From the IMG/VR virus record IMGVR_UViG_3300009158_000031, positions 62,001-126,000 of that record: DNA of 64,000 bases; one strand, 5' to 3'. Positions within the stretch are counted from its first letter, which is position 1. Every line of letters begins with the position of its first letter. Below, piece by piece: positions 1,301 through 63,752 of the stretch. The notes under the pieces are model-generated. The model did no database searches, was not told where the DNA came from, and was given only the letters and a program-made list of their open reading frames with translations. The translations under genes and the position numbers were made by a program.

Positions 1301-1665
1301 TGAAAACATTCAAAGAATATCTTATTGAAAGTAATACTTTCTCTGAAGAAGAAATCAAAGCACTTAATGAAAATCTTAAGTCTGAATTAACTGAAGCTGA
1401 AGAAGCTAAAATCGATAAAGCTATCAAAGAATTTTGTAGTCAATATCTTGATAAAAACAAGAATATAAAAGAATTTAATGAAGAGCTTACAAATGAAGGT
1501 TTTCTAGGATCTATCCTAGGAGGTCTTACCGGTTTTGCTCTAGGATCTTCGATCGGTAAAATTATTGCAAATGTACTAGGTATTGAGAGAGGCGTAATTT
1601 ACGATTTACTAACAAGTAGACTTGTTGGAGCTGCATTAGGTGCTGCATTAGGAAAACGTGTATGA
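1300..1665 (+). CDS. hypothetical protein with C-terminal glycine-zipper hydrophobic helices
   Basis: MKTFKEYLIE start; GFLGSILGGLTGFALG and GAALGAALG repeats; coupled to neighbours. Confidence 0.65.
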   Translation: MKTFKEYLIESNTFSEEEIKALNENLKSELTEAEEAKIDKAIKEFCSQYLDKNKNIKEFNEELTNEGFLGSILGGLTGFALGSSIGKIIANVLGIERGVIYDLLTSRLVGAALGAALGKRV

Positions 1666-2279
1666 TAATAGGAATTGATTTCTCAATTAACAGTACAGCC
1701 GTATCTATAAACGAAGGAGGTAACCTCACTCTATTTTCATTCGTTCCAAATTTTCAATCAGGTAAAGCCGCATTCAGAACACATGATGCAATACGAGAAA
1801 TTGTCACGGTTGTTAGCTATAATAAAGAACCTAATACTAAAGATAGTTTAGAAGATCAAAGAATTAAGATTCGTAATGCTAACGAATTATCCGATCAAAT
1901 AATATCTCACATTAGACCTTATTTAGAAGAAGCAGAATTTATCAATATAGAAGGTTTCTCATTTGGATCTAAAGGAAATTCTTTCATCGATCTAATATCA
2001 TACAATACATTTTTAAAAGTAAAACTGCTACAAATTGTAGGAGAGAAGATTTGGGTTATCCCTCCAAAATCTATTAAGAAGCTATATACAGGAAATGGCA
2101 ATGCTTCAAAATGTATGATGGTTAATCGTTTCATGATGGATTCTTCTCCTCTTCGAGATAAAATCACCGAACTTGAATTTATTCAAGAAGGAGAATACGC
2201 TATCCCTAAACCGATTGACGATATTGTTGATGCCGTAGCTCTTTCTCGATTAAACCCGAGTACACAATCCATCATATAA
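1662..2279 (+). CDS. ruvC: RuvC-like Holliday junction resolvase
   Basis: MIIGIDFSINSTA, IEGFSFG, KSIKKLYTGNGNASK, DDIVDAVAL. Confidence 0.8.
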   Translation: MIIGIDFSINSTAVSINEGGNLTLFSFVPNFQSGKAAFRTHDAIREIVTVVSYNKEPNTKDSLEDQRIKIRNANELSDQIISHIRPYLEEAEFINIEGFSFGSKGNSFIDLISYNTFLKVKLLQIVGEKIWVIPPKSIKKLYTGNGNASKCMMVNRFMMDSSPLRDKITELEFIQEGEYAIPKPIDDIVDAVALSRLNPSTQSII

Positions 2280-2300: not shown

Positions 2301-4130
2301 ATGAAAGTTAATATTATAACTAGGCTCACTCGACCTGAATACCTTAAAGAGGTTTGGAAATCTATAGAAGATTCTCGAGTAGATAACATCCAGATAAATT
2401 GGCATGTTATCATTGACATATTAGGTAATTTCTCAATATCCTCAGAACTTCTTAGGTTTATTGAGAGTAAAACTACCTCGATCATTATGGAAAAAGGTGA
2501 ACCAAACACTTTTGGATATAGCCTAATCAATAATCTAATTGATACTTTACCCGATGATGAATGGATATACATTCTTGACGATGATAATGCAATACATCCT
2601 GAATTTTTCAAAATCGTACAAGAAAGAGTTAACCTTCCCGGAATCTGGGCATTCAATCAATTAGTCGAAGGAAAAGACTTTACGAAATTACATATCAGAG
2701 AAGCCACTCTCGATAATATGAGATGGCAAGGAGTAGATGTTGGCCAACTACTTATTCATAAAGGAACAATGAATCCACATCGTTTTCATGCTCATTATAG
2801 TGGAGATGGATATTTCATCAATGCCATCAAGGCAGAAAAACCCGAGATATTTCATTTCATTAATGAAACCCTTACTAATTACAATTATTTTCAGAAGAAG
2901 AAGCTCAATAGAAAACTTCCAAGAATTCTATTAATACACGATAAAGATGTTGAGTTAATATCCAACAATCCACCTTATTTTGAATGTGAAGAACTTACAG
3001 TTAAAAGAATAGAGAAATATGATGAATCGGTCGTTTCTGAATTTAATCCAGATTGTATTTTATCGATTGGCGGTGAATGGAAAGATTATCCTGAGCTAGC
3101 TAATTCATCATTTGACTTTAAACAAAGGTGGTTGCATTTCGAAGAGTACTCACCAGAAATAGGAGAAGATGCCTATCAATGTGCAACTGCCTATATTCTA
3201 AATAGACAAACCACTCAACCGCTTTTAAGTATTATTACTCCAATATACAATACTGGAGATAAGCTAAGAAGAACTTATAAATCAATCAAAGAACAAACTT
3301 ACACGAATTGGGAATGGGTTATTGTTGACGATTCGACAGATGAATATACCTCTAATCTTGCAAAAGAAATCGAGAAAGATGATTCGAGAGTAACTGTCTA
3401 TCGAATACTTCCAATTAGTGGTGGAATTATTGGTGAAGCCAAATATCGTGCATTCATGCTTTCTCGAGGAGAAATTCTTATGGAAATGGATCATGATGAT
3501 GAGCTACATCCAGAAGCAAATGAATATATTATTAAGGCTTATAATCGATATCCAGATGCCGGTTTCTATTATTCAGATTGTATAGAGATTAACGAAAAAC
3601 ACGAATCTTTAACTTATGGACCTGATGGAACATGGGCTTTAGGTTATGGTAAATATTATGATTATCATCATAATGGAAGAGATTACAAATCCGTAGATCA
3701 ACCTAATATTAATCCTCTTACTATTCGCCACATTGTGGCTGTTCCAAATCACTTTCGTGCTTGGCGAAGAGATGTTTATCTTTCAGTTGGATCTCATAAT
3801 AGAAGATTATCCATAGCTGATGATTATGAGTTAATCGTTAGAACATTCCTACAAACTCGAATGGTTCACATTCCAAAACCTCTCTACTTCCAATATTATC
3901 ATGGAGGAAATTCTCAAGATGATGGTAATGCAAGAGCCGATATTCAAAGAAGAGTAAGATCTATTTCAGTTTTCTATAACTGGGATATCAGAAACAGATT
4001 CCGTCAATTAGGCGTAGAAGATTGGGCATTCGTTGATTCTAATTGGCCTTGGTACGAATCACCAAAATTCGGTGAGGAAGAGAAGTATGTTAATTATCTT
4101 TTAGATATTAATGAGAATGAAGGAGAATGA
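2301..4130 (+). CDS. two-domain family 2 glycosyltransferase
   Basis: N-terminal GT-A (WIYILDDDN). C-terminal GT2 (SIITPIYN, EWVIVDDST, MEMDHDD, ADDYEL). Confidence 0.85.
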   Translation: MKVNIITRLTRPEYLKEVWKSIEDSRVDNIQINWHVIIDILGNFSISSELLRFIESKTTSIIMEKGEPNTFGYSLINNLIDTLPDDEWIYILDDDNAIHPEFFKIVQERVNLPGIWAFNQLVEGKDFTKLHIREATLDNMRWQGVDVGQLLIHKGTMNPHRFHAHYSGDGYFINAIKAEKPEIFHFINETLTNYNYFQKKKLNRKLPRILLIHDKDVELISNNPPYFECEELTVKRIEKYDESVVSEFNPDCILSIGGEWKDYPELANSSFDFKQRWLHFEEYSPEIGEDAYQCATAYILNRQTTQPLLSIITPIYNTGDKLRRTYKSIKEQTYTNWEWVIVDDSTDEYTSNLAKEIEKDDSRVTVYRILPISGGIIGEAKYRAFMLSRGEILMEMDHDDELHPEANEYIIKAYNRYPDAGFYYSDCIEINEKHESLTYGPDGTWALGYGKYYDYHHNGRDYKSVDQPNINPLTIRHIVAVPNHFRAWRRDVYLSVGSHNRRLSIADDYELIVRTFLQTRMVHIPKPLYFQYYHGGNSQDDGNARADIQRRVRSISVFYNWDIRNRFRQLGVEDWAFVDSNWPWYESPKFGEEEKYVNYLLDINENEGE

Positions 4131-4239
4131 AGGAGATTAACCTAACTAGTAAATACTAGTACTGCCTGAAGAACTATATTATTTCCTCGATCACCTTAGA
4201 TAAAGGTTATATGACAATTAGATAGGGGCAGATTCAGTA
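4122..4239. repeat. copy 1 of dispersed 92-bp element, plus 15-nt variable spacer and CAGATTCAGTA
   Basis: 4122-4213 matches 63553-63644 at 91/92 nt; CAGATTCAGTA follows after 15 nt in both copies. Confidence 0.95.
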
Positions 4240-4277
4240 TTGATATATAAACTGAATAAAATTAAATTTAGCTTCTA

Positions 4278-5144
4278 ATGGCAAATAGTAGAGCATTCGC
4301 ATATAACCCGACTCTCGTGAGTGTAGCCGGAGCAACCAATTATGGATATCTATGTGTTGGATATCCGTCAGTTTCCTATGAATCTACTGGATTAACTTGG
4401 TGGGGTGGACCTAGTGAAGGTAAAGGTTATGTGATTGCTGCTGCTCTTCCAGGTGCTACTCAACCAACATCAGATCCAAATCGCCCTTTTGCCTCCGTGC
4501 AATTTTGGGGTACTGAAGTTCTTGTTGGTCCAACTAGTAATAATGCATTTCTTACATTAGCAAATTCTATAGGATCCACCACATTCACAACGGTCACTAA
4601 TGCAACGAATTGGTTAACTGCTAATGGATACTGGACTTCATATTTACCTTATGTTGCTGGATTATATAAGACAACATATAGTGGATATTTTGCTGACAAT
4701 GTTAGTTTCTTTGCAACGGCAACTCCTGCTTCAGTAGGAAATAATCCGGCAACATCTGTACAAACAACCTCTATATTTGAACCGGCTACTGATGATGGAA
4801 CTAATTTCAGTTGTCAATGGTTGGGATATTTCAAACCAACAACCACCGAAACCTACACATTTTTCACGTCATCCGATGATGCATCGTATGTTTGGGTTGG
4901 AAGTAATGCACAAACCGGATTTACTACCGGAAATGCAACGGTTAATAATGGAGGTGCTCATGGACCCACTGAAAGATCTGGTTCTATAGCTTTAACCGCT
5001 GGAGTTTATTATCCAATCCGAATACAATTTGGCGAACAAGGTGGAGGAGATGTAATGACATTTAATTACTCAACTCCAACTATTACTAAAACAACAAACG
5101 TAACCGGATTAGTTTTCTATAATTCAACAACTAACAATTTCTAA
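4278..5144 (+). CDS. virion decoration/adhesin with C-terminal PA14 domain
   Basis: FSCQWLGYFKP..TYTFFTSSDDASYVWV..LTAGVYYPIRIQFGEQGGG is typical PA14. N-terminal domain is shared with the next gene. Confidence 0.75.
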   Translation: MANSRAFAYNPTLVSVAGATNYGYLCVGYPSVSYESTGLTWWGGPSEGKGYVIAAALPGATQPTSDPNRPFASVQFWGTEVLVGPTSNNAFLTLANSIGSTTFTTVTNATNWLTANGYWTSYLPYVAGLYKTTYSGYFADNVSFFATATPASVGNNPATSVQTTSIFEPATDDGTNFSCQWLGYFKPTTTETYTFFTSSDDASYVWVGSNAQTGFTTGNATVNNGGAHGPTERSGSIALTAGVYYPIRIQFGEQGGGDVMTFNYSTPTITKTTNVTGLVFYNSTTNNF

Positions 5145-5148
5145 TTAA

Positions 5149-6426
5149 ATGGCAACCACTAGAACTTTCGCATATAATGTTGGTGCTACCGTTTCCGGTA
5201 CTCAAAAGATGGGATCTATTGCAATAGGAAGACCTACTTCAGGATTCTTTGCAACCGGATTAACCTGGAGAGGTGGTCCTGATGAAGATCTTGGATATAT
5301 TATTGCATATACTGCAACTCCTCCGAGAACTGCCGGAGGCAATACTATATCTATTTCGGTAAATGACATTGGATATAAAAGATCGATTGCTAAGACTGAT
5401 CAATCATTTATAAATTTGGCTAATCAAATTGGTGCTACATCTTTTGCATCCGCAATTGCTGCAAAAACCTGGTTAAATACAAACGGATACTGGACAAATT
5501 GGATACCAATAATTGATTCAGGATTAGTTCTGTATTTAGATGCAGGCTTAACTGCAAGTTATCCTCGTACTGGAACTACTTGGATTGATTTATCTGCATC
5601 TGGTAATATTGCAACTTTAGTTAACGGACCAACATTTAGTAGTACGAATGAGGGAAATTTTATATTTGATGGAGTAAATGATTATTGTTCAACCTCTCTA
5701 GTAAAAACTTTTACATCCATGACAATACAGGTTTGGTTTCGTGGAGATGGTGCTAATCAAAATGGAACATATGGTTTTGCAGGAGTAGTAGCAAATAGAA
5801 CTTCTCCGGCAGATGCAACTGGATTACTATTAAATAACAATAATAATAAATCATTAGGGTATAGTTGGAATGGTGTAACAAATACATGGAGTTGGAATTC
5901 TGGATTAGTATTAGATTATTATGGATGGCATTTTTTATCATTAACCGTAACACCAACATTAGCAACCGCATTTTTGAATGGAGCTACTGCTACTAACGTG
6001 GTTAATCACGCATCAACATCAATAACAAGTTTAGCAATAGGTAAAGATTATGTTACTGAACGATATGTTACTGGAGGCATAGCCTCCGTATCCGTTTATG
6101 ATAGAGCTCTATCTAACGCAGAAGTTCTCCAAAATTACAATGCAACTAAGGATAGGTTTGCCAATGCAACTATCGGTTATACCGTGTATAACGGTTGTAA
6201 TGCTGCTTCTGCGGTAATTTGGGTTGCATCTGCTGGACTTACTGTTGGTAAAACTGTTTATGCGGATTCTAATTTAACTACACTATATGCTAGCCAAACA
6301 TTTTCTCAAAATGTCTGGCCAGATGATCCTGACTATTCCGCTGACGGAATAGTAACTAATAGTTCTGGAATAATTACTTCAATTACGCAAACAATAGGCG
6401 GCTGTAATGTACAAACCTATTGTTAA
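5149..6426 (+). CDS. virion decoration/adhesin with LamG/ConA-like lectin domain
   Basis: GLVLYLDAG..SYPRTGTTWIDLS..FDGVNDY..VYDRALSNAEVLQNYNA. N-terminal domain is paralogous to 4278..5144. Confidence 0.75.
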   Translation: MATTRTFAYNVGATVSGTQKMGSIAIGRPTSGFFATGLTWRGGPDEDLGYIIAYTATPPRTAGGNTISISVNDIGYKRSIAKTDQSFINLANQIGATSFASAIAAKTWLNTNGYWTNWIPIIDSGLVLYLDAGLTASYPRTGTTWIDLSASGNIATLVNGPTFSSTNEGNFIFDGVNDYCSTSLVKTFTSMTIQVWFRGDGANQNGTYGFAGVVANRTSPADATGLLLNNNNNKSLGYSWNGVTNTWSWNSGLVLDYYGWHFLSLTVTPTLATAFLNGATATNVVNHASTSITSLAIGKDYVTERYVTGGIASVSVYDRALSNAEVLQNYNATKDRFANATIGYTVYNGCNAASAVIWVASAGLTVGKTVYADSNLTTLYASQTFSQNVWPDDPDYSADGIVTNSSGIITSITQTIGGCNVQTYC

Positions 6427-8224: not shown

Positions 8225-8399
8225 ATCTCATTTGAAGTGAGATACATATAATAATTATAACATCTAAAAAATGTTATAACCAAGTAAGTAGAACAAGCTT
8301 AGATTAGGTGAAACTAATTTAATCCGGAGTAAGTAAGTGAATCTAAGATTTAAGTAAGTTCATATTAAATAAACAACGTAAATAAAAAAGTAAGTAAAC
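8225..8399 (+). promoter_or_regulatory. gp32 leader: CATATAA motif, hairpins and 4x AAGTAAGT (putative translational operator)
   Basis: Stems 8225-8230/8238-8243, 8255-8263/8271-8279 and 8298-8305/8340-8347. AAGTAAGT at 8282, 8331, 8352, 8388. Confidence 0.55.
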
Positions 8400-9323
8400 A
8401 TGGAAAACAAATTCGACATCTTTAATCTGTCTTTGGAAGATTTCAAAACAGAAGAAAAACCAAAATCTGGTCAGGATCTTTACAAAACAGATCCTAAATT
8501 ATCTAAGGACTCTATCTACAGAGCAATCGTTCGTTTCATACCGAACGTTAAAAACCCAAAGAAATCTTTCGTTAAAAAATTCTCATACTGGTTGGAAGAC
8601 GCAGGTGGAAATGGATTTTACGTAGATTGTCCTTCATCAATTGGTGACAAATCAATTATTCAAGACACTTTCTGGAAGCTATACAAATCGGAATCCGCTT
8701 TCGATAAAAAACAAGCTGAAAAGATTAAACGTAAAGAGTACTACTACTCTCTTGTTTATATCATGAAAGATCCACAACGTCCTGAATACGAAAACACCGT
8801 ACAAATCCTTCGTTACCCTCGTGCCGTTAAGAAATTAATCGATTCGCAAATTCAACCAGATGTTACTGATTTGGAAATGGGAACCGAACCAACTAACGTT
8901 TTCGACTTCTTCGAAGGAAAAGACTTCTCATTAAAAGTTACAATGAAAGGTGGTTATTGGAATTATGACGAATGTAAATTCGCTCAAGCTAAAACTCCTA
9001 TCACGGTAAATGCAGTTAAAATGGATAACAATTCAGAATCACGTAAAATGATTATGGACCTTTACGAAGGTGCTGCTGATATTGAAATCTATGACTTCAA
9101 ACAATGGGATGAAGAATTAAGAAATAAGGTTAACAACGTATTGAGTGAAATTACAGGAAATCCCGGTGCTGCTTATAATGCAGTCACTTCTCCTGCTAAA
9201 ACTGCTTCAGCTCCTCAACGAACTGAATCTGCTCCTAAAAAAGAAGAATCAATTCCTACTCCATCTAATCCAGGTACCGATGAAAACATCGAGGATTGGT
9301 TGAAAGAATTTGATATCAAGTAA
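8400..9323 (+). CDS. 32: single-stranded DNA binding protein (T4 gp32-like)
   Basis: AIVRFIP, FFEGKDFSLKV, WNYDECKF, acidic/aromatic C-terminal tail (IEDWLKEFDIK). Confidence 0.8.
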   Translation: MENKFDIFNLSLEDFKTEEKPKSGQDLYKTDPKLSKDSIYRAIVRFIPNVKNPKKSFVKKFSYWLEDAGGNGFYVDCPSSIGDKSIIQDTFWKLYKSESAFDKKQAEKIKRKEYYYSLVYIMKDPQRPEYENTVQILRYPRAVKKLIDSQIQPDVTDLEMGTEPTNVFDFFEGKDFSLKVTMKGGYWNYDECKFAQAKTPITVNAVKMDNNSESRKMIMDLYEGAADIEIYDFKQWDEELRNKVNNVLSEITGNPGAAYNAVTSPAKTASAPQRTESAPKKEESIPTPSNPGTDENIEDWLKEFDIK

Positions 9324-9348: not shown

Positions 9349-9376
9349 AAAGGGGTTCTATATGGACCCCTTTTTT
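9349..9376 (+). terminator. intrinsic terminator after gp32
   Basis: AAAGGGGTTC-TATAT-GGACCCC-TTTTTT. Confidence 0.85.
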
Positions 9377-9388
9377 CTTATAATAAAT

Positions 9389-10459
9389 ATGGAATTAAAA
9401 GAATCTTCGAGGAATCATATTACATCGTTGATAGATTCAATTCTCCATGAACAATTTTCAGGAGAAAAGGCACAACCAAAAATATATCGAGATCGTATAA
9501 ATTTTGCATGCCCTTATTGTGGCGATTCACATGGTGCTCACAAGAAACGTGGAAATATTTATTGGAAAAATTTAAAATTTCATTGCTACAATGGTGGATG
9601 TCCTAAACCACATACTACGGTAGTTGATTTTTTAAAAGATCATGGAAAATCTTTCAATAAGAAAGATGAACTTATTTATGTACTAGATTTTATTCAAGCA
9701 AATACGATTGTAGTACCAACTAAAGATTATCTTCAAGTAGGTATATTTGGCGAACTTCGAAAAGGTGCAATACCTTTAATTGAAGTAAAAACCAAGCTAA
9801 ATCTAATTGATCCAAATAAGAATTTAAGAATTGAAGCATATTTAAAAGCTCGATTCATGCATTACAAAATGGAATTCTTTGCATACGATCCTAAACGAGA
9901 TCAACTCTACATATTCAATCTAACACCAGATAAACAAAGTGTATTAGGTTGGCAAATTCGTAATTTCGGTAAAAGAACCGATGAAGCAAAATATGTAAGT
10001 TATAATATGGAAAAAATGCATCTCATCGTTCGAGAAAAACTTCTAGAAGGAAGTGGTGAAACGGTAATGCGTTTAAATACTTTATCACTTTTCTTCAATA
10101 TAATGTTAACCGACTTTACTCAAATGGTAACTGTATTTGAAGGTCCAATGGATGCATTTCTTTGTAAAAATGCAATAGCACTTTCAGGAATCGATAAACC
10201 ATTTGATATGTTTAATGAAATGCCTAATATGCGTTATCTATTTGATAATGATTATATTGGCAGAAAGAAAATGGAAGATATCTTAAAGAAAAAACGATCA
10301 GTATTTATGTGGAATAAAATCATAAGAGATTATAAGATACGTGAAAAGGTGAAAGATCTACAAGATCTATTCGCTTATTGTTGGAAAACTAAGAATGAAG
10401 CAATTAAAAATTATGGTGAATACTTTACATCAAATCCCCTCGATATCAGATCTGTATAG
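9389..10459 (+). CDS. 61: DNA primase (T4 gp61-like)
   Basis: Zn finger CPYCGDS..HCYNGGC; TOPRIM motifs VFEGPMDA and FDND. Confidence 0.85.
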   Translation: MELKESSRNHITSLIDSILHEQFSGEKAQPKIYRDRINFACPYCGDSHGAHKKRGNIYWKNLKFHCYNGGCPKPHTTVVDFLKDHGKSFNKKDELIYVLDFIQANTIVVPTKDYLQVGIFGELRKGAIPLIEVKTKLNLIDPNKNLRIEAYLKARFMHYKMEFFAYDPKRDQLYIFNLTPDKQSVLGWQIRNFGKRTDEAKYVSYNMEKMHLIVREKLLEGSGETVMRLNTLSLFFNIMLTDFTQMVTVFEGPMDAFLCKNAIALSGIDKPFDMFNEMPNMRYLFDNDYIGRKKMEDILKKKRSVFMWNKIIRDYKIREKVKDLQDLFAYCWKTKNEAIKNYGEYFTSNPLDIRSV

Positions 10460-17544: not shown

Positions 17545-18945
17545 ATGATATTAGATATTGAAAACAATTTCAATGAATTAACCATTTCTTATTTCAATAA
17601 GGAAGGAAATATTCGTTTAAAGAAATATAAACTAACTGAAGAACAATGTTCCAATTGGCGATTATGTTCTGAATCCGATACCAAGAAATCTACACAATTC
17701 AGGAATTGGGATGGAAAACCAGTAAAGAAAGTTAAAGATAAAAAACTTCAAAAATTCTCCATCTATGAATTTATCAACAATTTAGAAGATGAAGATAAAG
17801 ATGAAATTATCGGCTTCCATCTTCCTAAAATACAATCCGTCGATATTGAAACTGAAGTAATTGATTCTTTTCCAGATCCAAATATTGCTCGAGAAAGAAT
17901 CACCACAATTGCAATTTCAACAGAAACTAATAAAACTATTGTTCTTGGTTGGAAAAAGATCACAAAAGAACAAGAGAAAGAAATATTCGATAAACATCGA
18001 GAATATCTGAAAAACTTCGGTGATTGGGATTTCAAATATATTTGTTTCGAGGATGAATTCAATATGATGTATACTTTTGTTAATCAATTTATTCCAAATT
18101 TCTCCGTAATGATTGGATGGAATTTTATGAACTTTGACTGGAAATACATCTATAATCGTTGTAAAAAGCTCGGGATAGATATTACCTCGGCTTCTCCTAG
18201 TAAGAAAGTACAAGGTAATGACAATATCTTAATGCACGTTGGTATTATCGATTATCTTGATATTTATAGAAGATGGGATAGAACAGTAGCTATCAAAGAA
18301 AGCAATTCATTAGATTTTGTTGCTAGTGCTGTTTTAGGAACAACCAAATTAAAGTACAATGGAACTCTACAAGAGTTATACGAAAATGATTATGACAAAT
18401 ACATTTTATATAATGCCGTCGATGCTGCATTGGTGTCTTTAATACATCGTAAATTAAAAACTCTTAATATGGTATTCTCTATCGGATGTATTTGTCGCGT
18501 TCCCATCTATCGAGCTTCCTCGGCTGTGAATGTTACTGAAGCTCTTCTTTGGAAAGGATTCTATAATCGAAATCAAGTAATTGCCGATGATAGAACCGAA
18601 AAAATCAAAGGATCTTATGAAGGTGCTTATGTTAAAGAACCTGAACCAGGAATGTTCAGAGCGGCAACATGTTTTGATTATGCATCTCTATATCCATCAA
18701 TTATGCGTCAATACAATGTGTCACCTGAATCATTCTTACGAAAAGAATTAAACCAAGAAAATCTAGAAAAATATCGTCAAGATCCCAATTTCGTTGTATC
18801 GGTTACCGGTGCAATATATGATAACTCTAAGGTTTCTGTGTTAAAAGAAATTCTAACCGACCTTTATACTGAACGTAAAACGAATAAAAATCGTGGACTC
18901 GATATCGAAAGATCTCTAATTAAAATAAAAAAGAAAAATGCCTAA
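17545..18945 (+). CDS. 43A: family B DNA polymerase, N-terminal subunit (3'-5' exonuclease and motif A), gp43A-like
   Basis: VDIET, GWNFMNFD, YNAVDA, FDYASLYPS; ends in the first fingers helix. Confidence 0.9.
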   Translation: MILDIENNFNELTISYFNKEGNIRLKKYKLTEEQCSNWRLCSESDTKKSTQFRNWDGKPVKKVKDKKLQKFSIYEFINNLEDEDKDEIIGFHLPKIQSVDIETEVIDSFPDPNIARERITTIAISTETNKTIVLGWKKITKEQEKEIFDKHREYLKNFGDWDFKYICFEDEFNMMYTFVNQFIPNFSVMIGWNFMNFDWKYIYNRCKKLGIDITSASPSKKVQGNDNILMHVGIIDYLDIYRRWDRTVAIKESNSLDFVASAVLGTTKLKYNGTLQELYENDYDKYILYNAVDAALVSLIHRKLKTLNMVFSIGCICRVPIYRASSAVNVTEALLWKGFYNRNQVIADDRTEKIKGSYEGAYVKEPEPGMFRAATCFDYASLYPSIMRQYNVSPESFLRKELNQENLEKYRQDPNFVVSVTGAIYDNSKVSVLKEILTDLYTERKTNKNRGLDIERSLIKIKKKNA

Positions 18946-23010: not shown

Positions 23011-24211
23011 TTTCAATCCAGAAAAAATTGCAATAGAAGATATTCCAGCACTTCTCGAATCCCTATCAGGTAAAGATCGAGAAGATGCTATAACCGCTCT
23101 TAAAGCCGAACAACTTCGATGCAGTACTCAGGAACAGGGAATTAAACTAATTATTAACTCAATTTATGGAGCCTTCGCGAATGAGTATTTTCACTTCTAT
23201 AATATTTCAGTTGCAGAAACAGTAACTCTTCAAGGACAAGATGCTATCAAATTTACTGAACGTATGGTTGATAAGTATTTCAAAGAATTCTTTCATCGAG
23301 ACAAACCTTTACTAACTGAATTAGGTGTTATCGAAAACCAAGTAGTTCCTAGAATCAAAGGTAATGTTTGGAAATATACCGATACGGATTCAGGTTATTT
23401 AATCTTCGAAGAATGTATGGAAGCGGTTCAATGGAAAGGTACCGTAAAAGAATTTGTTCTAACTCTTAATTCCTTTAGATTATCTGATTATATTAAGAAA
23501 GTTCTTAATGATTATGCCAAAACATTTCAAACCGAAAATTATCTAGATTTCGAATTAGAAACTATTGCAGAAAATGCAATTTGGGTAGCTAAGAAAAAAT
23601 ACATCCAAAATATCATTTGGAAAGATGGTAAAGATTACGATAATCTTTCATATATCAAAACAACTGGTCTAGAAATTATTCAATCATCAACTCCTGTATT
23701 TTGCAGAGGTAAACTTATCGATGCTGTAAAGTATATGTTCTCAAAAGGTAAGATTACCGAAAAAGACGTAAGTGATTTAGTTAAGCTAATCAAAGAAATC
23801 AAACGAGAATTTAAGCTATCTAATATTGAAAAAATTTCAATGGGTCGTTCGGTTTCCGATTATCAAAAATTTGTAATCAACGATAACGATAAGCTAGAAC
23901 TTCAAAAAGGTTGTCCTATTCATGTTCGAGCAGCAGCACATTACAATTATTTACTTAATCAAAATCCCAAACTTAAAGGTAAATACGAAATGATTCGATC
24001 AGGTGATAAGCTAAAATGGTATCATGCAAACGATTCATTTTGTGATGTATTCGCCTATAAAGCAGGAATGCATCCCATGGAAATTGCTCCTAAAATGAAT
24101 ATTGAAAGACAATTTCAAGGATCAATTCTAGATCCACTTAATCGAATCATAACGCCAACAGGTATTCCGGCTTTGAATCCTTCATTGGCATATACAGTAA
24201 GCCTTTTCTAA
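23003..24211 (+). CDS. 43B: family B DNA polymerase, C-terminal subunit (motifs B and C), gp43B-like
   Basis: KLIINSIYG, YTDTDS, AKKKYI, GLEIIQSSTP. Confidence 0.9.
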   Translation: MINFNPEKIAIEDIPALLESLSGKDREDAITALKAEQLRCSTQEQGIKLIINSIYGAFANEYFHFYNISVAETVTLQGQDAIKFTERMVDKYFKEFFHRDKPLLTELGVIENQVVPRIKGNVWKYTDTDSGYLIFEECMEAVQWKGTVKEFVLTLNSFRLSDYIKKVLNDYAKTFQTENYLDFELETIAENAIWVAKKKYIQNIIWKDGKDYDNLSYIKTTGLEIIQSSTPVFCRGKLIDAVKYMFSKGKITEKDVSDLVKLIKEIKREFKLSNIEKISMGRSVSDYQKFVINDNDKLELQKGCPIHVRAAAHYNYLLNQNPKLKGKYEMIRSGDKLKWYHANDSFCDVFAYKAGMHPMEIAPKMNIERQFQGSILDPLNRIITPTGIPALNPSLAYTVSLF

Positions 24212-33642: not shown

Positions 33643-33999
33643 ATGGCAATATACGTAAAACCAAAAGAACTATACGAAGAAATTTGTATATCACTAGAGC
33701 AAAAGAAACTAACTCCAAAGGCGGAGAAGATGCTCATATTAATAGCTGAACGAGCTAATCAAAAGCTAAGATATGAAAATCCAATGGACCGAGAGGATTG
33801 TATCGCTTTTGCTCTTTTGGATTTGTTCAAGTACTGGGATCGATTCAAACCAGAAAAAACTAAAAACGCATTTGCATTCTATACACAAGTTGCAAAGAAT
33901 GCATATGCTAAAGGATGGAATAAACTACATCCAGGTAAATACAAAGGAACTTTATCACTTGATGGTGGTATGGATCGCGAAGGTATCTACTCAATATAA
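33643..33999 (+). CDS. 55: late-transcription sigma factor, gp55-like, very short
   Basis: YVKPKEL..REDCI..FKPEKTKNAFAFYTQ matches the gp55 region-2 pattern (F.PEKS.N.FAYFTQ). Confidence 0.75.
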   Translation: MAIYVKPKELYEEICISLEQKKLTPKAEKMLILIAERANQKLRYENPMDREDCIAFALLDLFKYWDRFKPEKTKNAFAFYTQVAKNAYAKGWNKLHPGKYKGTLSLDGGMDREGIYSI

Positions 34000-44060: not shown

Positions 44061-46646
44061 ATGATGACTAAAAATCTAGAAAATCTTATAAGAGACGAGT
44101 ATTTAATTGCTCTATATGAAAAACAAATATTAGAAAATTTTGATAGTGCTGAGGTAGAAACCTTATTTTCTGAATTTGTTTTAAATATATCAGAACATTT
44201 TAACTTATCTATAGATGAAGATGCAACAATAGAAGATGTTATGGAAGCATTTTCAGATTGGGATCTTTCTGATAACGAAACGTATCAAGAGCTTATTGAG
44301 GCAGTTAAAAGAAAACCTCGAGCTAAAAGAAAACCTGCTAGGCCGGCTGCCAAGAAACCTGCTGCTAAGAAACCGGCACCTAAACCTAAGGCAAAATCGG
44401 ATGCCAAACCAAAACCGGATGCTAAACCAAAAGCCGAGGCAAAGCCAAAAGCGGAAGAGAAACCTAAAGGAGAAGAAAAACCTAAAGGTGAAGAAAAACC
44501 TAAATCTAATCCAGAAGCAGATGCTAAAAAGATAGAAAAGATTAATGCAGAAAAGAAGAAGATTGACGATGAGTCTAAATCGATATCTCAACAATTAGAA
44601 ACCGAGAAAGATACAGATAAAAAAGGTGAATTAGAAGCAAAGAAAAAAGGTCTTAGAGCTGATTCCGCTATGTTATTAGCAAGTAAAAAGAAACTTGAAG
44701 GTGCTGATGATGCAAAAGAGGCATCTCAAATAGCTAAGGCTAAATCTGATGCTGCTAAAAATTACGATGAGTATATAAAGATCAAACAGCAAATATCTAA
44801 ATTAGGTGAATCTGCTAATGAAGCAGAAGAATTAACTCCGGCTACTCCTGCTACTCCAGCTGCTCCTATTGCTGCTGATCCCAAGATTAAAGAAGAAAAA
44901 GAAAAACTTGAAGCTGCTGCGAAAGTTGCACTTATTGCTTCATTAGAAGGAGATTTAGCTGCCGCTAAAATCGGAATAACCACTGCTACACCTGAAAGTA
45001 AAGCAGCTGCCCAATTAACTCATGATAATCTTGTAAAGAAAATAGAAGATTTAAAAAAGGATTCTGGTGGAACTCCAGCAACCGAAGAAAAACCTAAAGT
45101 AGATCCTGAAGCAGTCAAAGCTGCAGAAGCTAAAGTAAAAACTGCAACCGAAGCTAAAACCAATGCTGAAAAAGCATTAGCCGATAATAAGGATGAAACT
45201 AAAACCGAAGAATTAAAGAAAGCAGTTGCAGATGAAGATATTAAAGTTAAGGCTGCTGAAGGAGAATTAACTAAAGCTAAAGGTGAAGATGTAAAAACTC
45301 CTGGAACTGAAGAAAAACCTAAAGTAGATCCTGAAGCAGTCAAAGCTGCAGAAGCTGAAGTTGAAAAGGCTAAAACCGCACTTAAAACAGCAACTGAAGC
45401 TAAGGCTGCTCTAAAATCAGATGCAACTCCTGAAGAGAAGACTAAGGCAGAAACCGAAGTCACTAATGCTCAAACGGCTTTAGATACTGCAAATACGAAC
45501 TTAACTAAAGCTAAAGGTGAAGATGTAAAAACCCCTAAAAAAGGAGAAACTGAAGTTGATCAGGCTGCTATTGATTCCGCAAAGAAGAAAGTTGAAGAAG
45601 CTACAAAGGCACTTGAAACCGCAAAAGCGGCTAAGGCTGCTTTAAAATCAGACGCAACCGAAGAAGAAAAAGCTGCTGCCGAAACTGCCATTACTAATGC
45701 TCAAACGGCTTTAGAAACGGCAAACGGTGAATTGACTAAAGCTGAAGGTGCTGGAAAATCCGTAAAAAAAGAAGATCCAGCAAAACCTGCTAAAAATGTT
45801 TCACCTGAAGATAAAGCCAAAATAGAAAAATTAGAAGCTAGAGCAAAAGCTTTAGAAGAAGATATTGATCAGAAATCAGATATTAATGATGAGCAATTCG
45901 ATGCATTAGGGCAGAAAAGTAATGAAATTGCTGGAGATAATGGTATGCTTAAAAATCTCTTAACTAAAATCAGATTAGAAAACACTATAGAATATAATAA
46001 CATGAGACTTAAATTGTCTAGTGATAAAGATTCCGAAAAAATTGAGGATCAAAACAAAACAGCAGAAAAAACAATCGCTAAAGCAGACGCTAATCTTACG
46101 GATGCCGAATCTCAATCTTCTGAGGATGCAGAAAAAAATGCAACTCCAGAACAAAAGGCGGAATTAAAGAAAGCCCAAGAAGCAGCGGCTAAAGAGGCTG
46201 CTAAAGGTGGTGAAGGTGGAGAAGAAGATACCGAAGCTAAATTTGCTGCTCAAAAGAAAGAAAGAGAAGCAGCCGAAAAAGCCTCTCAAGGAAAAGGTAG
46301 AGATGCTGATATAGAAGCAGTTGGTGATACTCAAGCAGCAAAAGAGAAAGATTTTAAAATAAAATCATTAGATAAGAAAGTTAGTGCTATATCTGTTGCT
46401 TGGCAAAAAATGCAAGATGAAGCTAGTAAAGCAGAAGGTGACGATAAACCTAAAAAAGAAAAAGCCGCTGCTGCAATTGAAGCCAATCTTAATAAAGCAA
46501 AAGAAGAATTAACCGCATTAAAAGGAGGAACTCCTAAGCCTAATGAATCTCTTAATGATTTTGACTCACAAATCTGGGCAATCGAATTTATTCTAGAGAG
46601 AATCAATCAACAAATGGAAGAATATCAATTCTTAATTAATGAATAA
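44061..46646 (+). CDS. 861-aa Lys/Ala/Glu-rich repetitive protein
   Basis: KP-rich linker, repeated EEKPKVDPEAVKAAEA and TNAQTAL.TAN..LTKA.G units. Confidence 0.8.
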   Translation: MMTKNLENLIRDEYLIALYEKQILENFDSAEVETLFSEFVLNISEHFNLSIDEDATIEDVMEAFSDWDLSDNETYQELIEAVKRKPRAKRKPARPAAKKPAAKKPAPKPKAKSDAKPKPDAKPKAEAKPKAEEKPKGEEKPKGEEKPKSNPEADAKKIEKINAEKKKIDDESKSISQQLETEKDTDKKGELEAKKKGLRADSAMLLASKKKLEGADDAKEASQIAKAKSDAAKNYDEYIKIKQQISKLGESANEAEELTPATPATPAAPIAADPKIKEEKEKLEAAAKVALIASLEGDLAAAKIGITTATPESKAAAQLTHDNLVKKIEDLKKDSGGTPATEEKPKVDPEAVKAAEAKVKTATEAKTNAEKALADNKDETKTEELKKAVADEDIKVKAAEGELTKAKGEDVKTPGTEEKPKVDPEAVKAAEAEVEKAKTALKTATEAKAALKSDATPEEKTKAETEVTNAQTALDTANTNLTKAKGEDVKTPKKGETEVDQAAIDSAKKKVEEATKALETAKAAKAALKSDATEEEKAAAETAITNAQTALETANGELTKAEGAGKSVKKEDPAKPAKNVSPEDKAKIEKLEARAKALEEDIDQKSDINDEQFDALGQKSNEIAGDNGMLKNLLTKIRLENTIEYNNMRLKLSSDKDSEKIEDQNKTAEKTIAKADANLTDAESQSSEDAEKNATPEQKAELKKAQEAAAKEAAKGGEGGEEDTEAKFAAQKKEREAAEKASQGKGRDADIEAVGDTQAAKEKDFKIKSLDKKVSAISVAWQKMQDEASKAEGDDKPKKEKAAAAIEANLNKAKEELTALKGGTPKPNESLNDFDSQIWAIEFILERINQQMEEYQFLINE
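45084..45356 (+). repeat. exact 48-nt intragenic direct repeat (45084-45131 and 45309-45356)
   Basis: GAAGAAAAACCTAAAGTAGATCCTGAAGCAGTCAAAGCTGCAGAAGCT occurs twice. Confidence 0.9.
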
Positions 46647-49237: not shown

Positions 49238-49303
49238 TGTTAATAAGTTTTGAAAAATAATTGACTAAAAATTTTTTTATTCCACTTATTTGTATTATAT
49301 TTG
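49238..49303 (+). promoter_or_regulatory. early promoter cassette copy 1
   Basis: TGTTAATAA...TTTTTTTATTCC...TATTATATTTG (Bacteroidota TAnnTTTG box). Confidence 0.8.
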
Positions 49304-49326
49304 TTATAACCAATTAATATAAACAT

Positions 49327-61720: not shown

Positions 61721-63550
61721 ATGAGATTTGTACTTGATATATCTGCAAACAATAACACTTACAAGGCTAATGATTCTTTGGTTGTTAAATTTTCAGATTC
61801 TTTTAAATTAATTGGATCTATACAATCAATTAACTTTGATTTTGCTCCACTAGATACTGCATCAAATGGACACGATATTTCTATTCGTTGGTCGTATGAC
61901 GGTATGGTATGGTCAGCATGGGAAGATTGGATAATCAAAACAGCAGCTGTTGCAAATCAACAAGATCTAATTAGTAAAATTATCACCAATCACGATTCAT
62001 TCTTTTTAGAATTTCGTTTAGTTAGATATGGTACAGATGTAGGAACTAGAACTCTTACATTAGCGGCAATGGAATTCGAGAGCAAATCTGCTCCTGAACA
62101 AATGGTTGAATCGCCATTTGGAAATACATCATGTTATGCACAATGTTCTCCATCACAAAACTTCTATACCGGAGTAAGAATTGATTGTGATCCAAGACTT
62201 CTATTTCAACCTTACAATTTAATGAATCCGGCAATAAACTTCTATCGAGAAGCTTCGAATGCCGTATCTGAAATGTTTGGTCATTGTGTTCGTTATTTCA
62301 AAACTCAAGCAGATGTTGCTTCAGCTGATGCGGTACTTAAAGAATATTCATTATTCAATGTGACTGATGTTAAAGACATCAAAATCATGGTTCCGGATAA
62401 TACATTCCCAGATAATGCTATTGCATTCTTTCCTTATGATATGGATTTTGGAGAAGGTCTAGAGATACACATAGTAAGAGATCATTTCGAAAGAGCATTC
62501 GGTGTAGATGATTTACCTGAACAAAAAGATTATTTATACTTTCCTCTCATAGATCGTATGTTCGAAGTTCATTCAGCATATCTTTATAGAGATTTTATGA
62601 TGTCTCAAGTTTATTACAAAGTGATGCTATACAAATGGCAAGATAAGCTAAATGTAATGAGAGATATCAAAGAAATCAATGATTATGTAGATAATTTAAC
62701 TGAGAATTTTGATGAAGTTCTACAACCAGAGGTGGATAAAGAATTTTTACAAATAACGAAACCAGATCAATATGTAACTTCATCCATGAATAATATCGGT
62801 GGATATGATAATGTTAGATCTCTTATTAATACAGATATTCAAATAAAGACTTATGATCTAAACAATTACTTTACAATAGTAGGTAAGTATTTTTACGAAT
62901 TGAATACCGGAATAAAACAAAATGATTTAGCGGTGAAATATAAATTGTTAGTAAATAGATCACAAAGTGAACATACTGCATTTTCTGCATGGTTCAAACC
63001 TTTAAAGTCTAATTGGACAACGCAAACAAATACATACGATACAATAATCAATGGATATAATACTGCAGAATCCAAAGGTTATCGAATCAATCTTCTTTAT
63101 AGTAATGTAAATAATACAGTTGTTACTAGTGGAATAGAAGTTAAAATAAATGGACAAACTTTACAATTCAATCAAGATTTTCCTCAATTAAATAGAGACG
63201 AATGGTATGCAATCGTATTTAATCAGCTAAACGATTTTTCACAGGCATCAATTCATATTTGGAAAATGAAATGGACAGGGGCACCAAACACACAAAAGAC
63301 AACCGATCTTCAATTAGTATACACTCAAAACGTTTCAATTATTGCAGAAGAAGTCAAACCAACTGCAACTAATTTTACTTTAGTCGGTGGAACTTTAGGA
63401 ATAACAAATGTAAGAATTTGGAAAGAATCTATTGAAGAAGAAAAACAACCATTGGTTCTTAATCAATATGTAGTAAGAGATTCTCATTTATCTTTAGCTA
63501 CAGACAATGCTATACCACCTTTACGATTAGTTAAAGAATATGTTAGATAA
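61721..63550 (+). CDS. neck protein gp14-like domain with C-terminal LamG-like domain
   Basis: MFGHCVRYF..DYLYFPLIDRMFEV (gp14-like); SAWFKP..WYAIVF..ITNVRIW (LamG-like). Confidence 0.55.
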   Translation: MRFVLDISANNNTYKANDSLVVKFSDSFKLIGSIQSINFDFAPLDTASNGHDISIRWSYDGMVWSAWEDWIIKTAAVANQQDLISKIITNHDSFFLEFRLVRYGTDVGTRTLTLAAMEFESKSAPEQMVESPFGNTSCYAQCSPSQNFYTGVRIDCDPRLLFQPYNLMNPAINFYREASNAVSEMFGHCVRYFKTQADVASADAVLKEYSLFNVTDVKDIKIMVPDNTFPDNAIAFFPYDMDFGEGLEIHIVRDHFERAFGVDDLPEQKDYLYFPLIDRMFEVHSAYLYRDFMMSQVYYKVMLYKWQDKLNVMRDIKEINDYVDNLTENFDEVLQPEVDKEFLQITKPDQYVTSSMNNIGGYDNVRSLINTDIQIKTYDLNNYFTIVGKYFYELNTGIKQNDLAVKYKLLVNRSQSEHTAFSAWFKPLKSNWTTQTNTYDTIINGYNTAESKGYRINLLYSNVNNTVVTSGIEVKINGQTLQFNQDFPQLNRDEWYAIVFNQLNDFSQASIHIWKMKWTGAPNTQKTTDLQLVYTQNVSIIAEEVKPTATNFTLVGGTLGITNVRIWKESIEEEKQPLVLNQYVVRDSHLSLATDNAIPPLRLVKEYVR

Positions 63551-63552
63551 TG

Positions 63553-63670
63553 GGAGAATGAAGGAGATTAACCTAACTAGTAACTACTAGTACTGCCTGA
63601 AGAACTATATTATTTCCTCGATCACCTTAGATAAAGGTTATATGTTATTTTGAAGTAGTCAGATTCAGTA
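63553..63670. repeat. copy 2 of dispersed 92-bp element, plus 15-nt spacer and CAGATTCAGTA
   Basis: See copy 1 at 4122-4239. Confidence 0.95.
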
Positions 63671-63752
63671 CCATCGTTGATTCATTTACACATTTCCTGC
63701 AAATAATAATAAAACCTAAGAGATGCTAATTTATGCATCCAATAAATAAATT

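What the first reader, a model, noticed from the sequence alone, without database searches (positions are those of the whole stretch)
4122..4239. 92-bp element duplicated 59.4 kb away, with a fixed-length 15-nt variable spacer and a conserved 11-mer
Seen: 4122-4213 and 63553-63644 match at 91/92 nt, and the one difference is in the loop of ACTAGT-NNNT-ACTAGT. Each copy continues with 15 unrelated nt (ACAATTAGATAGGGG vs TTATTTTGAAGTAGT) and then CAGATTCAGTA. Both start at the stop codon of an upstream gene, and copy 1 has a GAGAATGAAG duplication that forms that gene's last codons. Further pairings are ACCTT/AAGGT and TAACCT/AGGTTA. On the minus strand it reads TACTGAATCTG-N15-CATATAA, i.e. two-box promoter geometry driving a ~80-nt antisense RNA ending in CTCCTTCATTCTCC. 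Inference: candidates are a T4-style promoter-driven R-loop origin, a duplicated sRNA gene, a non-autonomous mobile element, or a scaffold with a variable guide.
Basis: partly seen in the sequence, partly recalled or inferred. Interest (0 to 1): 0.75.

Follow-up and report, generated by a model that had tools for sequence, protein, structure and literature searches.

The report
Repeated phage promoter-plus-leader cassette
The duplicated 118-bp element is one of three copies of a non-coding cassette in a 254-kb jumbo phage: read on the opposite strand it is a two-box promoter (its "variable 15-mer" is simply the promoter spacer) followed by a strongly conserved, untranslated leader, and it belongs to a promoter class that also drives the phage's DNA-replication genes.

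Summary
Window 4122-4239 and 63553-63670 match as described, and a third, inverted copy lies elsewhere in the same 254-kb phage genome. Independent assemblies carry the same copies.

Read on the minus strand, the element is TGAATC-N17-CATATAAC followed by a 44-nt invariant stretch. About 30 distinct relatives in PAU/PTm1-like jumbo phages share TGAA[A/T]C, exactly 17 nt, then CATATAAC and a related downstream sequence. They occur about three times per genome, in either orientation.

The −35 box and spacing are ECF-sigma-like, and the phage encodes an ECF sigma. The genome has only five TGAATC-N17-CATA sites, all intergenic. The other two sit before SSB/primase genes and nucleotide-metabolism genes.

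No frame is consistently open, no Rfam family matches, there is no terminator, and RNA structure is not significant.

Best reading: a non-coding "middle-class" transcription unit. Whether its product primes replication (a T4 oriF/oriG-like R-loop), acts as a small RNA, or only marks recombination-prone junctions is unresolved. The guide-scaffold and MITE readings are rejected.

The parts
4229..4239 (-). Copy 1: upstream (-35-like) box TACTGAATCTG, with core TGAATC at 4231-4236.
   Evidence: Identical in all window-clade copies. It is TGAAAC in distant relatives, always 17 nt from CATATAAC.
4214..4228 (-). Copy 1: the 15 variable nt, which are the central part of the 17-nt promoter spacer.
   Evidence: Fixed length and variable, AT-rich sequence in all family members.
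4206..4213 (-). Copy 1: downstream (-10-like) box CATATAAC.
   Evidence: Invariant in the family. CATATAA is the phage's strand-biased gene-start motif.
4162..4205 (-). Copy 1: 44-nt invariant, untranslated, initially transcribed region (the leader). The start site is predicted at about 4200-4205.
   Evidence: 100% identical in every window-clade copy (in L008 one G-to-A change, at the position of window 4164) despite 80-90% flank identity. About 60-70% conserved in distant relatives. No frame is consistently open.
4113..4161 (-). Copy 1: variable 3' module. It holds the ACTAGT-AAAT-ACTAGT hairpin (4145-4160) and two TCCTTCATTC units (minus strand), which overlap the last codons of the GT2 gene.
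   Evidence: The hairpin is present or absent and the unit copy number varies among relatives. The module is not conserved in L029.
63660..63670 (-). Copy 2: upstream box TACTGAATCTG, with TGAATC at 63662-63667.
63645..63659 (-). Copy 2: the 15 variable nt of the promoter spacer.
63637..63644 (-). Copy 2: CATATAAC box.
63593..63636 (-). Copy 2: 44-nt invariant leader.
63553..63592 (-). Copy 2: variable 3' module (hairpin at 63576-63591 and one TCCTTCATTC unit). It ends 3 nt from the neck-protein stop codon.
8338..8364 (+). Another promoter of the same class (TGAATC-N17-CATATTAA), in the sense direction, 36 nt before the SSB gene (8400-9323), which is followed by a primase gene (9362-10456). 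It lacks the conserved leader.
1662..2279 (+). RuvC-like resolvase gene. In distant relatives the antisense cassette sits directly after this gene. Here the GT2 gene (2301-4130) lies between the two.
33643..33999 (+). gp55-like late sigma gene, given as context for the CATATAA motif. The ECF sigma gene lies outside the window at G000 157936-158535.

Best explanation
It is a non-coding transcription cassette with three parts:
1. An A/T-rich upstream region, then a two-box promoter: TGAATC, 17 nt, CATATAAC.
2. A 44-nt leader whose sequence is held invariant.
3. A plastic tail of short repeats or a small hairpin.

The fixed-length variable 15-mer is the promoter spacer. Its length is fixed because a sigma factor must touch both boxes. 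Its sequence is free because the spacer is not read base by base.

By box sequence and spacing the promoter is of the ECF-sigma type, and the phage encodes such a sigma behind a host-type early promoter. The same promoter class precedes the SSB/primase genes and the nucleotide-metabolism genes. The cassette is therefore most likely fired in the pre-replicative or middle phase.

The genome carries three cassettes, two antisense to the uniformly plus-strand genes and one sense. Relatives carry about three each.

Shown by sequence and comparison: the anatomy, the conservation pattern, the copy number, the absence of coding capacity and the presence of the sigma gene.

Inferred: My committed guess for the product is a short untranslated RNA whose conserved first ~44 nt are the active part. 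Origin-type priming is the leading sub-hypothesis (see rivals).
For: - Three copies and no more in the genome.
- When the gap was allowed to range from 8 to 28 nt, all true family members had N17. The four other matches were chance hits in coding sequence.
- The boxes are invariant and the spacer varies in about 30 distinct sequences.
- The T/A-rich stretch upstream of the first box resembles an UP element.
- CATATAA occurs 76 times on the plus strand and 35 on the minus strand. 48 of the 76 lie within 60 nt upstream of a start codon, with no -35 conservation.
- The phage has an ECF sigma with Sigma70_r2 and r4_2 domains, above the TIGR02937 cutoff. Homologs are present in relatives that carry the cassette.
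- Published ECF promoters read tgaAAC, then 14-17 bp, then CGTA or CGTC (PMC5758882).
- All five TGAATC-N17-CATA sites of the 254-kb genome are intergenic, although only 8.4% of the genome is intergenic. Two of them precede SSB/primase and PNK-like/dCMP-deaminase genes.
- G001 and G002 have 7 and 6 such sites, against 0 and 2 for the reversed-pattern control.
- No reading frame is open across the variants.
- The antisense position directly after the RuvC-like gene is conserved across distant relatives. This shows that the orientation is not an accident.
Against: - No transcription start has been mapped. The metatranscriptome contigs that cover the element are shallow (depth 4-7), carry no strand information, and break at the repeat boundaries.
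- In the window clade the -35 box is TGAATC, which lacks the canonical AAC. The -10 is CATA rather than the CGT typical of ECF promoters.
- CATATAA could instead be read by the gp55-like late sigma.
- No terminator follows the cassette.
- RNA structure is not significant.
- In the 64-kb window alone, 3 TGAATC-N17-CATA sites against 0.43 expected is reached by 3 of 100 shuffles. The statistical weight therefore rests on the longer conserved pattern and on the comparative data.
Confidence: 0.7

Rival explanations
1. Role of the transcript, version A: replication origin of the T4 oriF/oriG type. [quoted passage not shown] On this view the three cassettes are the phage's origins.
For: - The promoter class is shared with the SSB/primase and nucleotide-metabolism genes. 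In T4, likewise, origin promoters are MotA-dependent middle promoters (PMC3016281).
- The cassette is non-coding, has no terminator, occurs about three times per genome at widely spaced sites, and is found in both orientations in genomes whose genes all run one way.
- Copy 1 lies 4 kb from the replication gene cluster.
Against: - T4 R-loop formation needs an A+T-rich unwinding element but no specific sequence. Here the downstream 44 nt are sequence-invariant and are not more A+T-rich than the genome (62% against 67%).
- There is no GC-skew inflection at the sites.
- No gp59-type loader was detected, although that search was uninformative.
- Two of the three copies would fire head-on against transcription.
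Confidence: 0.3
2. Role of the transcript, version B: a multi-copy trans-acting small RNA (a regulator, or a decoy for a protein). Its conserved 5' ~44 nt would be the functional part, and its 3' end would be made by Rho or by processing.
For: - The transcribed part is invariant within the clade and is kept identical among the three copies, while the promoter spacer and the tail drift.
- Position and orientation are free, as expected for an independent gene.
- The hairpin GAGGAA/UUCUUC contains a G.U pair that would be a C.A mismatch on the other strand. The RNA strand folds lower than its complement in 17 of 24 members.
Against: - No intrinsic terminator and no Rfam hit.
- Structure z-scores average about -0.25, and covariation is not above shuffles.
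- A scan of all phage translation-initiation regions gave no target better than shuffled RNAs did.
- The RNA libraries show no pile-up of a short abundant species.
- No match in 185,579 species genomes to a 20-mer of the core.
Confidence: 0.25
3. A DNA-level or evolutionary role only: a PeSL-like regulatory cassette. Its repeats act as recombination points that shuffle accessory genes, or as a convergent-promoter insulator at module borders. The transcript itself would have no function.
For: - The cassettes sit at junctions where gene content varies between relatives. A GT2 gene lies between the RuvC-like gene and the cassette here. At site B, relatives carry an IscA-like gene, GIY-YIG endonuclease genes or nothing. 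At site C, relatives carry an extra cupin-like gene.
- Copies A and B within one genome share tail variants that differ between genomes. This shows gene conversion.
- PeSLs are described as promoter-terminator repeats that mediate such shuffling (PMC4122927).
Against: - Recombination alone does not explain the invariant 44-nt leader or the exact 17-nt spacing.
- There are only three copies, not dozens.
- The antisense orientation after the RuvC-like gene is conserved over a long evolutionary distance.
Confidence: 0.12
4. A coding remnant or micro-ORF on the plus strand, for example a C-terminal tail reading ...LPEELYYFLDHLR* or a short leader peptide starting at the ATG that ends the core.
For: In some relatives the frame ending LPEELYYFLDHLR* is open for 23-27 codons. 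In copy 3 another frame gives a 41-aa ORF that ends exactly in CAG ATT CAG TAA, and 15 nt equals 5 codons.
Against: - In the window's copies 1 and 2 every frame is interrupted by stops.
- The frame that is open, and its start codon, differ between variants.
- The core is invariant at synonymous positions too, while frame-breaking indels accumulate just upstream.
- Distant family members share no ORF.
Confidence: 0.03
5. A mobile element (MITE) or a scaffold RNA with a variable 15-nt guide.
For: - Presence/absence at site B among relatives.
- Copies in both orientations.
- A variable segment of fixed length.
Against: - No terminal inverted repeats and no flanking target duplication. The GAGAATGAAG repeat is internal, lies on one side only, and varies in copy number.
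- The variable segment is conserved between orthologous sites of different phages and lies between the promoter boxes, that is, upstream of the RNA.
- No transposase, Cas-like or IS-type gene is linked to it.
Confidence: 0.03

Closest known systems
ECF-sigma promoters (for example B. subtilis sigma-W: TGAAAC, about 16 nt, CGTA)
   Same: A two-box architecture with a -35 box of the tgaAAC type, a rigid spacer of 16-17 nt and a short -10 core. An ECF sigma gene is present in the same genome. The regulon is small, with promoters close to consensus.
   Different: The window clade has TGAATC. The -10 is CATA(T/A)AA, not CGT-type, and coincides with the phage's general gene-start motif. The sigma-promoter link is untested. 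There is no anti-sigma or autoregulatory arrangement in this genome.
Phage T4 origins oriF (uvsY) and oriG (34): a middle-mode promoter plus a downstream unwinding element that forms an R-loop primer
   Same: A few dispersed, roughly 100-bp non-coding units headed by a promoter of the class that also serves replication genes. They are independent of the orientation of neighbouring genes. The phage has a gp55-like late sigma and a T4-late-like -10-only motif (PMC3016281).
   Different: T4 origins share little sequence with each other and need only an A+T-rich DUE. Here the three units are near-identical and the downstream part is sequence-conserved, not A+T-enriched. The activator is a sigma rather than MotA/AsiA. 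No replication data exist.
PeSL (promoter-early stem-loop) cassettes of T4-type phages
   Same: Short, conserved, repeated intergenic promoter cassettes at the borders of variable genes. They are homogenised by recombination and associated with gene gain and loss (PMC4122927).
   Different: PeSLs are host sigma-70 early promoters with a terminator stem-loop. They are numerous, clustered in hyperplastic regions and co-oriented with the genes. This cassette has three copies, a different promoter type, a conserved leader, and is often antisense.
T4 late promoter TATAAATA (gp55)
   Same: CATATAA[T/A] is a -10-only, strand-biased motif 9-30 nt before many genes, and a gp55-like protein is encoded.
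   Different: The cassette adds a conserved upstream box at fixed distance. Ordinary CATATAA sites lack this box.

Membership tests
ECF-sigma-dependent promoter | A -35 element containing the AAC motif (tgaAAC). | tested here: inconclusive
   Distant family members have TGAAAC. The window clade has TGAATC, and L029 has TGAATC followed by AG (consensus from PMC5758882).
ECF-sigma-dependent promoter | A rigid spacer of about 14-17 bp between the boxes. | tested here: met
ECF-sigma-dependent promoter | A CGT-type -10 core. | tested here: not met
   The -10 is CATA(T/A)AA. It resembles CGTA at 3 of 4 positions only.
ECF-sigma-dependent promoter | A cognate ECF sigma is available, and transcription depends on it. 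| not testable with these tools
   The sigma gene is present and is conserved in relatives. Dependence needs in vitro transcription or genetics. Complex prediction did not fold the protein-DNA pair.
T4-type R-loop origin (oriF/oriG) | Headed by a middle-class promoter (the class that serves replication genes). | tested here: met
   The same TGAATC-N17-CATA class precedes the SSB/primase and dCMP-deaminase clusters. Timing is inferred, not measured.
T4-type R-loop origin (oriF/oriG) | [quoted passage not shown] | tested here: not met
   The 44-nt leader is 62% A+T against 67% for the genome (sequence, composition).
T4-type R-loop origin (oriF/oriG) | A persistent RNA-DNA hybrid, and initiation of DNA synthesis at the site. 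| not testable with these tools
   Needs DRIP, 2D gels or early-infection coverage. GC skew is uninformative.
Small RNA gene | Its own promoter. | tested here: met
   Two-box promoter conserved.
Small RNA gene | A defined 3' end or terminator. | tested here: not met
   No terminator-like site in 3900-4500. The small ACTAGT hairpin is absent in many variants.
Small RNA gene | A conserved secondary structure with covariation. | tested here: inconclusive
   65% of cells paired against 62.7% in shuffles; 100 of 500 shuffles did as well. Mean z is -0.25. Arm sequences vary in a complementary way, but the register shifts.
Small RNA gene | Detected as a discrete transcript. | tested here: inconclusive
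   The element is present in four metatranscriptome assemblies, but at low depth, unstranded, and with contig ends at the repeat borders.
PeSL cassette | A host-type early promoter plus a terminator stem-loop, in many co-oriented copies in hyperplastic regions. | tested here: not met
   The promoter type differs. The host-type early promoters of this phage are the TTTTTTTATTCC...TAnnTTTG family. There are three copies, two of them antisense.
PeSL cassette | Marks the borders of indels and gene replacements between close relatives. | tested here: met
MITE / non-autonomous transposon | Terminal inverted repeats and a target-site duplication. | tested here: not met
   The ends (GAGAATGAAGGAG... 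and ...CAGATTCAGTA) are not inverted repeats, and no flanking duplication is present at any of the three sites.
Guide-RNA scaffold (CRISPR-like, omega-RNA-like, bridge-RNA-like) | The variable segment is part of the RNA and matches targets, and an effector gene is linked. | tested here: not met
   The variable 15 nt lie upstream of the predicted start, between the boxes. They are conserved between orthologous sites. No linked effector gene.
Any Rfam family | A covariance-model match. | tested here: not met
   No match over the element even at E up to 10.

The most novel reading that the evidence does not exclude
The three cassettes are sigma-gated replication origins or primer-RNA genes. On this reading a phage-encoded ECF sigma switches on the replication genes and, at the same time, fires three conserved non-coding transcripts that prime or license DNA synthesis. 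This would be a MotA-independent analogue of T4 oriF/oriG in jumbo phages of Bacteroidota, with a sequence-specific rather than merely A+T-rich downstream element.
Probability: 0.25. Interest if true: 0.7.

Novelty: new variant of a known kind. Interest (0 to 1): 0.5.

Why it matters
Nothing is known about the transcription programme or the origins of the uncultured PAU/PTm1-like jumbo phages of freshwater Bacteroidota. This analysis gives a testable three-tier scheme:
- host-type TAnnTTTG early promoters;
- a small ECF-type class, TGAA[A/T]C-N17-CATA;
- a gp55-like class with only a -10 box, CATATAA.

It also singles out three conserved non-coding units per genome as the obvious places to look for origins or a phage small RNA.

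It further shows how a "variable spacer of fixed length" between conserved blocks can be promoter geometry rather than a guide. That is a useful caution for scans of this kind.

Tried and rejected
- Phage-database nucleotide search of the region: no match.
- Rfam at a permissive threshold: nothing on the element.
- Folding of both strands of all three copies: not better than shuffles.
- Coding hypothesis: six-frame comparison across variants shows no consistently open frame.
- Profile search (nhmmer) for weaker copies in the genome: only three.
- Two pattern scans returned only chance hits beyond the known clade.
- Metatranscriptome contigs laid on 3300-5300: present, but unstranded, shallow, and broken at repeat borders.
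- GC and AT skew: no inflection at the sites.
- Purine richness and AGG-motif counts of the leader: unremarkable.
- RNAalifold on the family: no consensus structure.
- Pair counting for two candidate hairpins: not above shuffles.
- Per-sequence z-scores: mean -0.25.
- Search for phage mRNA targets of the leader: not above shuffled RNAs. The 14-mer matches at G000 6640 and 118086 lie inside coding regions and look like chance.
- Host-mimic idea (CRISPR repeat, rRNA or tRNA fragment): a 20-mer of the core has no match in 185,579 species genomes.
- A wide-family pattern found one true member in a 3.9-kb scaffold binned with a Chitinophagales MAG, plus one chance hit.
- Sigma-DNA complex prediction was not folded by the tool and is not evidence either way.
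- T4 gp59 family search: uninformative.
- A possible fourth copy at G000 137605: similarity too weak.
Full report
**1. Observation.**
The two stretches are as described.
- Window 4122-4213 and 63553-63644 are identical at 91 of 92 positions. The one difference is in the loop of the ACTAGT hairpin (4153, A versus C).
- Each copy is followed by 15 dissimilar nt and then by CAGATTCAGTA.
- The GAGAATGAAG tandem duplication (4113-4132) provides the last codons and the stop of ORF 2301-4130. Copy 2 begins 3 nt after the stop of the upstream ORF (63548-63550).

The window is positions 62001-126000 of a 254,393-bp IMG/VR virus record. That genome contains a third copy at 232210-232287 on the other strand. 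The third copy keeps the 52-nt core, a 15-nt segment and the 11-mer, but has a different 5' part without the hairpin. A profile search finds no further copies. The same copies with their own flanks occur in several independent assemblies, so this is not an assembly artefact.

**2. Genome context.**
- 302 of the 304 ORFs of at least 70 aa kept by my own simple greedy caller are on the plus strand.
- Copy 1 lies between a family-2 glycosyltransferase gene and a PA14/GLEYA-domain gene.
- Copy 2 lies between a neck-protein gene and a 209-aa gene.
- Copy 3 lies between a 400-aa gene and a 154-aa gene.
- The nearest cultured relatives by neck protein are Tenacibaculum phages PTm1 and PTm5, Sphingomonas phage PAU and Chryseobacterium phages.
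- Host-type promoters of the Bacteroidota kind (TAnnTTTG) are present.
- One family member sits on a scaffold binned with a Chitinophagales MAG.

**3. Which strand matters.**
CATATAA[T/A] is a strongly strand-biased motif in this genome. It occurs 76 times on the plus strand and 35 on the minus strand. 48 of the 76 lie within 60 nt upstream of a start codon, and nothing is conserved upstream of it. This resembles the T4 late promoter, and a gp55-like late sigma is encoded at window 33643-33999.

The reverse complement of the element reads TACTGAATCTG, then 15 nt, then CATATAACC. In copy 3 this orientation runs with the genes.

Relatives whose neck protein is only 55-60% identical carry TGAAAC-N17-CATATAAC[C/G]ATTAC... 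The downstream sequence aligns with the reverse complement of the window's core: for example ATTCGAGGAAAATGATATA against GATCGAGGAAATAATATA.

**4. The variable 15-mer is a promoter spacer.**
- Among about 30 distinct sequences, the two boxes are invariant or nearly so, the sequence between them varies, and the distance is always 17 nt.
- Some of my searches had fixed that distance, so I repeated the scan allowing 8-28 nt. All 15 true members had 17 nt. The four matches with 20, 21, 24 and 24 nt had no downstream similarity and lay in coding sequence.
- A T/A-rich stretch precedes the first box.
- Fixed length with free sequence between two conserved boxes is what recognition by a sigma factor predicts. 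It is not what a guide segment predicts.
- The 15-mers are also conserved between orthologous sites of different phages.

**5. Promoter class.**
TGAAAC followed by a rigid 16-17-nt spacer is the ECF-sigma -35 pattern. Published examples read tgaAAC, with CGTA for sigma-W and spacers of 14-17 bp (PMC5758882).

The phage encodes a 199-aa ECF sigma with Sigma70_r2 and r4_2 domains. It scores above the TIGR02937 cutoff, and its best subfamily hits are Bacteroidetes ECF and SigW models. The gene sits behind a host-type early promoter. Homologs at 55-96% identity occur in four of five related records that carry the cassette; the fifth is a 19% fragment.

With the -10 relaxed to CATA, the genome has five TGAATC-N17-CATA sites, all intergenic although only 8.4% of the genome is intergenic. 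Three are the cassette. The other two lie 34-36 nt before genes:
- window 8338-8364 precedes an SSB gene followed by a primase gene;
- G000 14217 precedes PNK-like and dCMP-deaminase genes, followed by an ORF that looked NDK-like to me by eye but had no PHROG hit.

Related genomes show 6-7 such sites against 0-2 in a reversed-pattern control. Again about three of them carry the conserved leader.

So this is a small promoter class tied to replication and nucleotide metabolism, analogous to the T4 middle mode. The link to the ECF sigma is an inference. The window clade's -35 box lacks the AAC, and the -10 is not CGT-type.

**6. What follows the promoter.**
- The first 44 nt downstream (window 4162-4205 and 63593-63636, minus strand) are identical in all window-clade copies at all three sites, apart from one G-to-A change in L008. 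Flanking genes are only about 80-90% identical.
- In the more distant L029, conservation stops after about 40 nt.
- Beyond the leader comes a plastic tail. It contains an optional small hairpin and 1-2 copies each of GTAATTCAAG and TCCTTCATTC units. Other clades have other short tandem units there.
- No frame is open across the variants.
- Rfam finds nothing, and there is no terminator.
- Candidate hairpins exist. One has a G.U pair that only works on the minus-strand RNA, and its arm sequences differ between clades in a complementary way. But the register shifts, formal pair counts do not exceed shuffles, and folding z-scores average -0.25.

The leader is thus conserved mainly as primary sequence.

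**7. Distribution and evolution.**
- Each sufficiently complete genome has about three cassettes, in both orientations. The window's genome has them at 66.2 kb (antisense), 125.7 kb (antisense) and 232.2 kb (sense). G001 (246 kb) has them at 47.9 kb (antisense), 101.8 kb (sense) and 191.1 kb (sense).
- In distant relatives one cassette sits directly after a RuvC-like resolvase gene and points back into it.
- The window's RuvC-like gene is at 1662-2279. The GT2 gene lies between it and copy 1. Copy 1 is therefore the orthologue of that antisense site, and its orientation is ancient.
- The site after the neck gene is sense in distant relatives and antisense in the window clade. It is empty in many relatives, and in others it is occupied by GIY-YIG endonuclease genes or an IscA-like gene.
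- Copies A and B within one genome share tail variants that differ between genomes. This indicates gene conversion.

**8. Function.**
What is shown: a conserved two-box promoter geometry; a sequence-invariant, untranslated downstream segment; three dispersed copies; independence from gene orientation; and membership of a promoter class that serves replication genes.

What is inferred: that transcription starts near 4200-4205 and 63631-63636 on the minus strand, in the middle phase, and under the phage sigma.

For the role of the product I weigh three readings.
- An R-loop origin like T4 oriF/oriG fits the promoter class, copy number, orientation freedom and lack of a terminator. But T4 origins need only an A+T-rich unwinding element, not a specific sequence (PMC3016281), and the leader is not A+T-enriched.
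- A trans-acting small RNA fits the invariance of the transcribed part. But it lacks a terminator, significant structure, detectable phage targets and any visible pile-up in RNA libraries.
- A PeSL-like recombination or insulator cassette (PMC4122927) fits the junction positions and the gene conversion. It does not explain the invariant leader.

The available RNA data cannot decide. The contigs are unstranded, shallow, and break at the repeat borders.

**9. Verdict.**
- Its minus-strand promoter reading is supported.
- Its guide-scaffold and transposon readings are rejected.
- Its origin and sRNA readings remain the two live hypotheses for the transcript.

The element is best filed as a new variant of the known kind "repeated phage promoter cassette". 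Its unusual features are an ECF-type promoter, an invariant leader and a conserved antisense placement.

Noticed in passing
whole genome G000; e.g. window 2273, 7397, 16783, 21816: CATATAA[T/A] lies 9-30 nt upstream of many start codons. It occurs 76 times on the plus strand and 35 on the minus strand. 48 of the 76 lie within 60 nt upstream of an ATG, and there is no -35 conservation. This is a T4-late-like promoter or gene-start motif with very short leaders.
   Followed up: partly
window 33643-33999; G000 157936-158535: Two phage sigma genes. One is a 118-aa gp55-like late sigma (PHROG 234, E 7.6e-12). The other is a 199-aa ECF sigma (r2 + r4_2) that sits behind a host-type early promoter.
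   Followed up: partly
window 49243-49305, 51048-51110, 54668-54730, 56992-57054; also G000 156230, 157520: A repeat family, TTTTTTTATTCC...TATTATATTTGTA, that contains the Bacteroidota -7 motif TAnnTTTG. These are probably host-sigma early promoters and point to a Bacteroidota host.
   Followed up: partly
window 18538-18891 and 23114-23614: The family-B DNA polymerase domain is split between two open frames (466 and 409 aa) about 4 kb apart. This suggests a split polymerase gene with intervening genes.
   Followed up: no
window 7406, 33998, 34286, 35943, 50536: Many small ORFs begin with a shared N-terminus (M-K-x-F-x-E-F-[IV]-N-E). This is a paralogous family typical of hypervariable regions, and it is also seen next to the cassette in relatives.
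   Followed up: no
L032 and L038 (site after the neck gene); L025 2701-3030: Relatives carry GIY-YIG homing-endonuclease-like genes, or an IscA/HesB-like gene, exactly where the window has copy 2. The junction is an insertion hot spot.
   Followed up: partly
window 44480-45750: Several families of 225-234-nt tandem repeats within a coding region rich in K/E/A/P. This is a repetitive structural or fibre-like protein.
   Followed up: no
window 4240-4268 and 63680-63720: Directly behind the cassette's upstream box, on the plus strand, lie the promoter-like sequences of the downstream genes (TATATAA at 4245-4251; TTGATT...AAATAAT in copy 2). At copies 1 and 2 the cassette and the next gene therefore form back-to-back divergent promoters.
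   Followed up: partly
G000 114196 and 137605: Two further near-matches to the two-box pattern, with 15- and 16-nt spacers, at the start of unusually long stretches without a called ORF (353 and 624 nt).
   Followed up: partly
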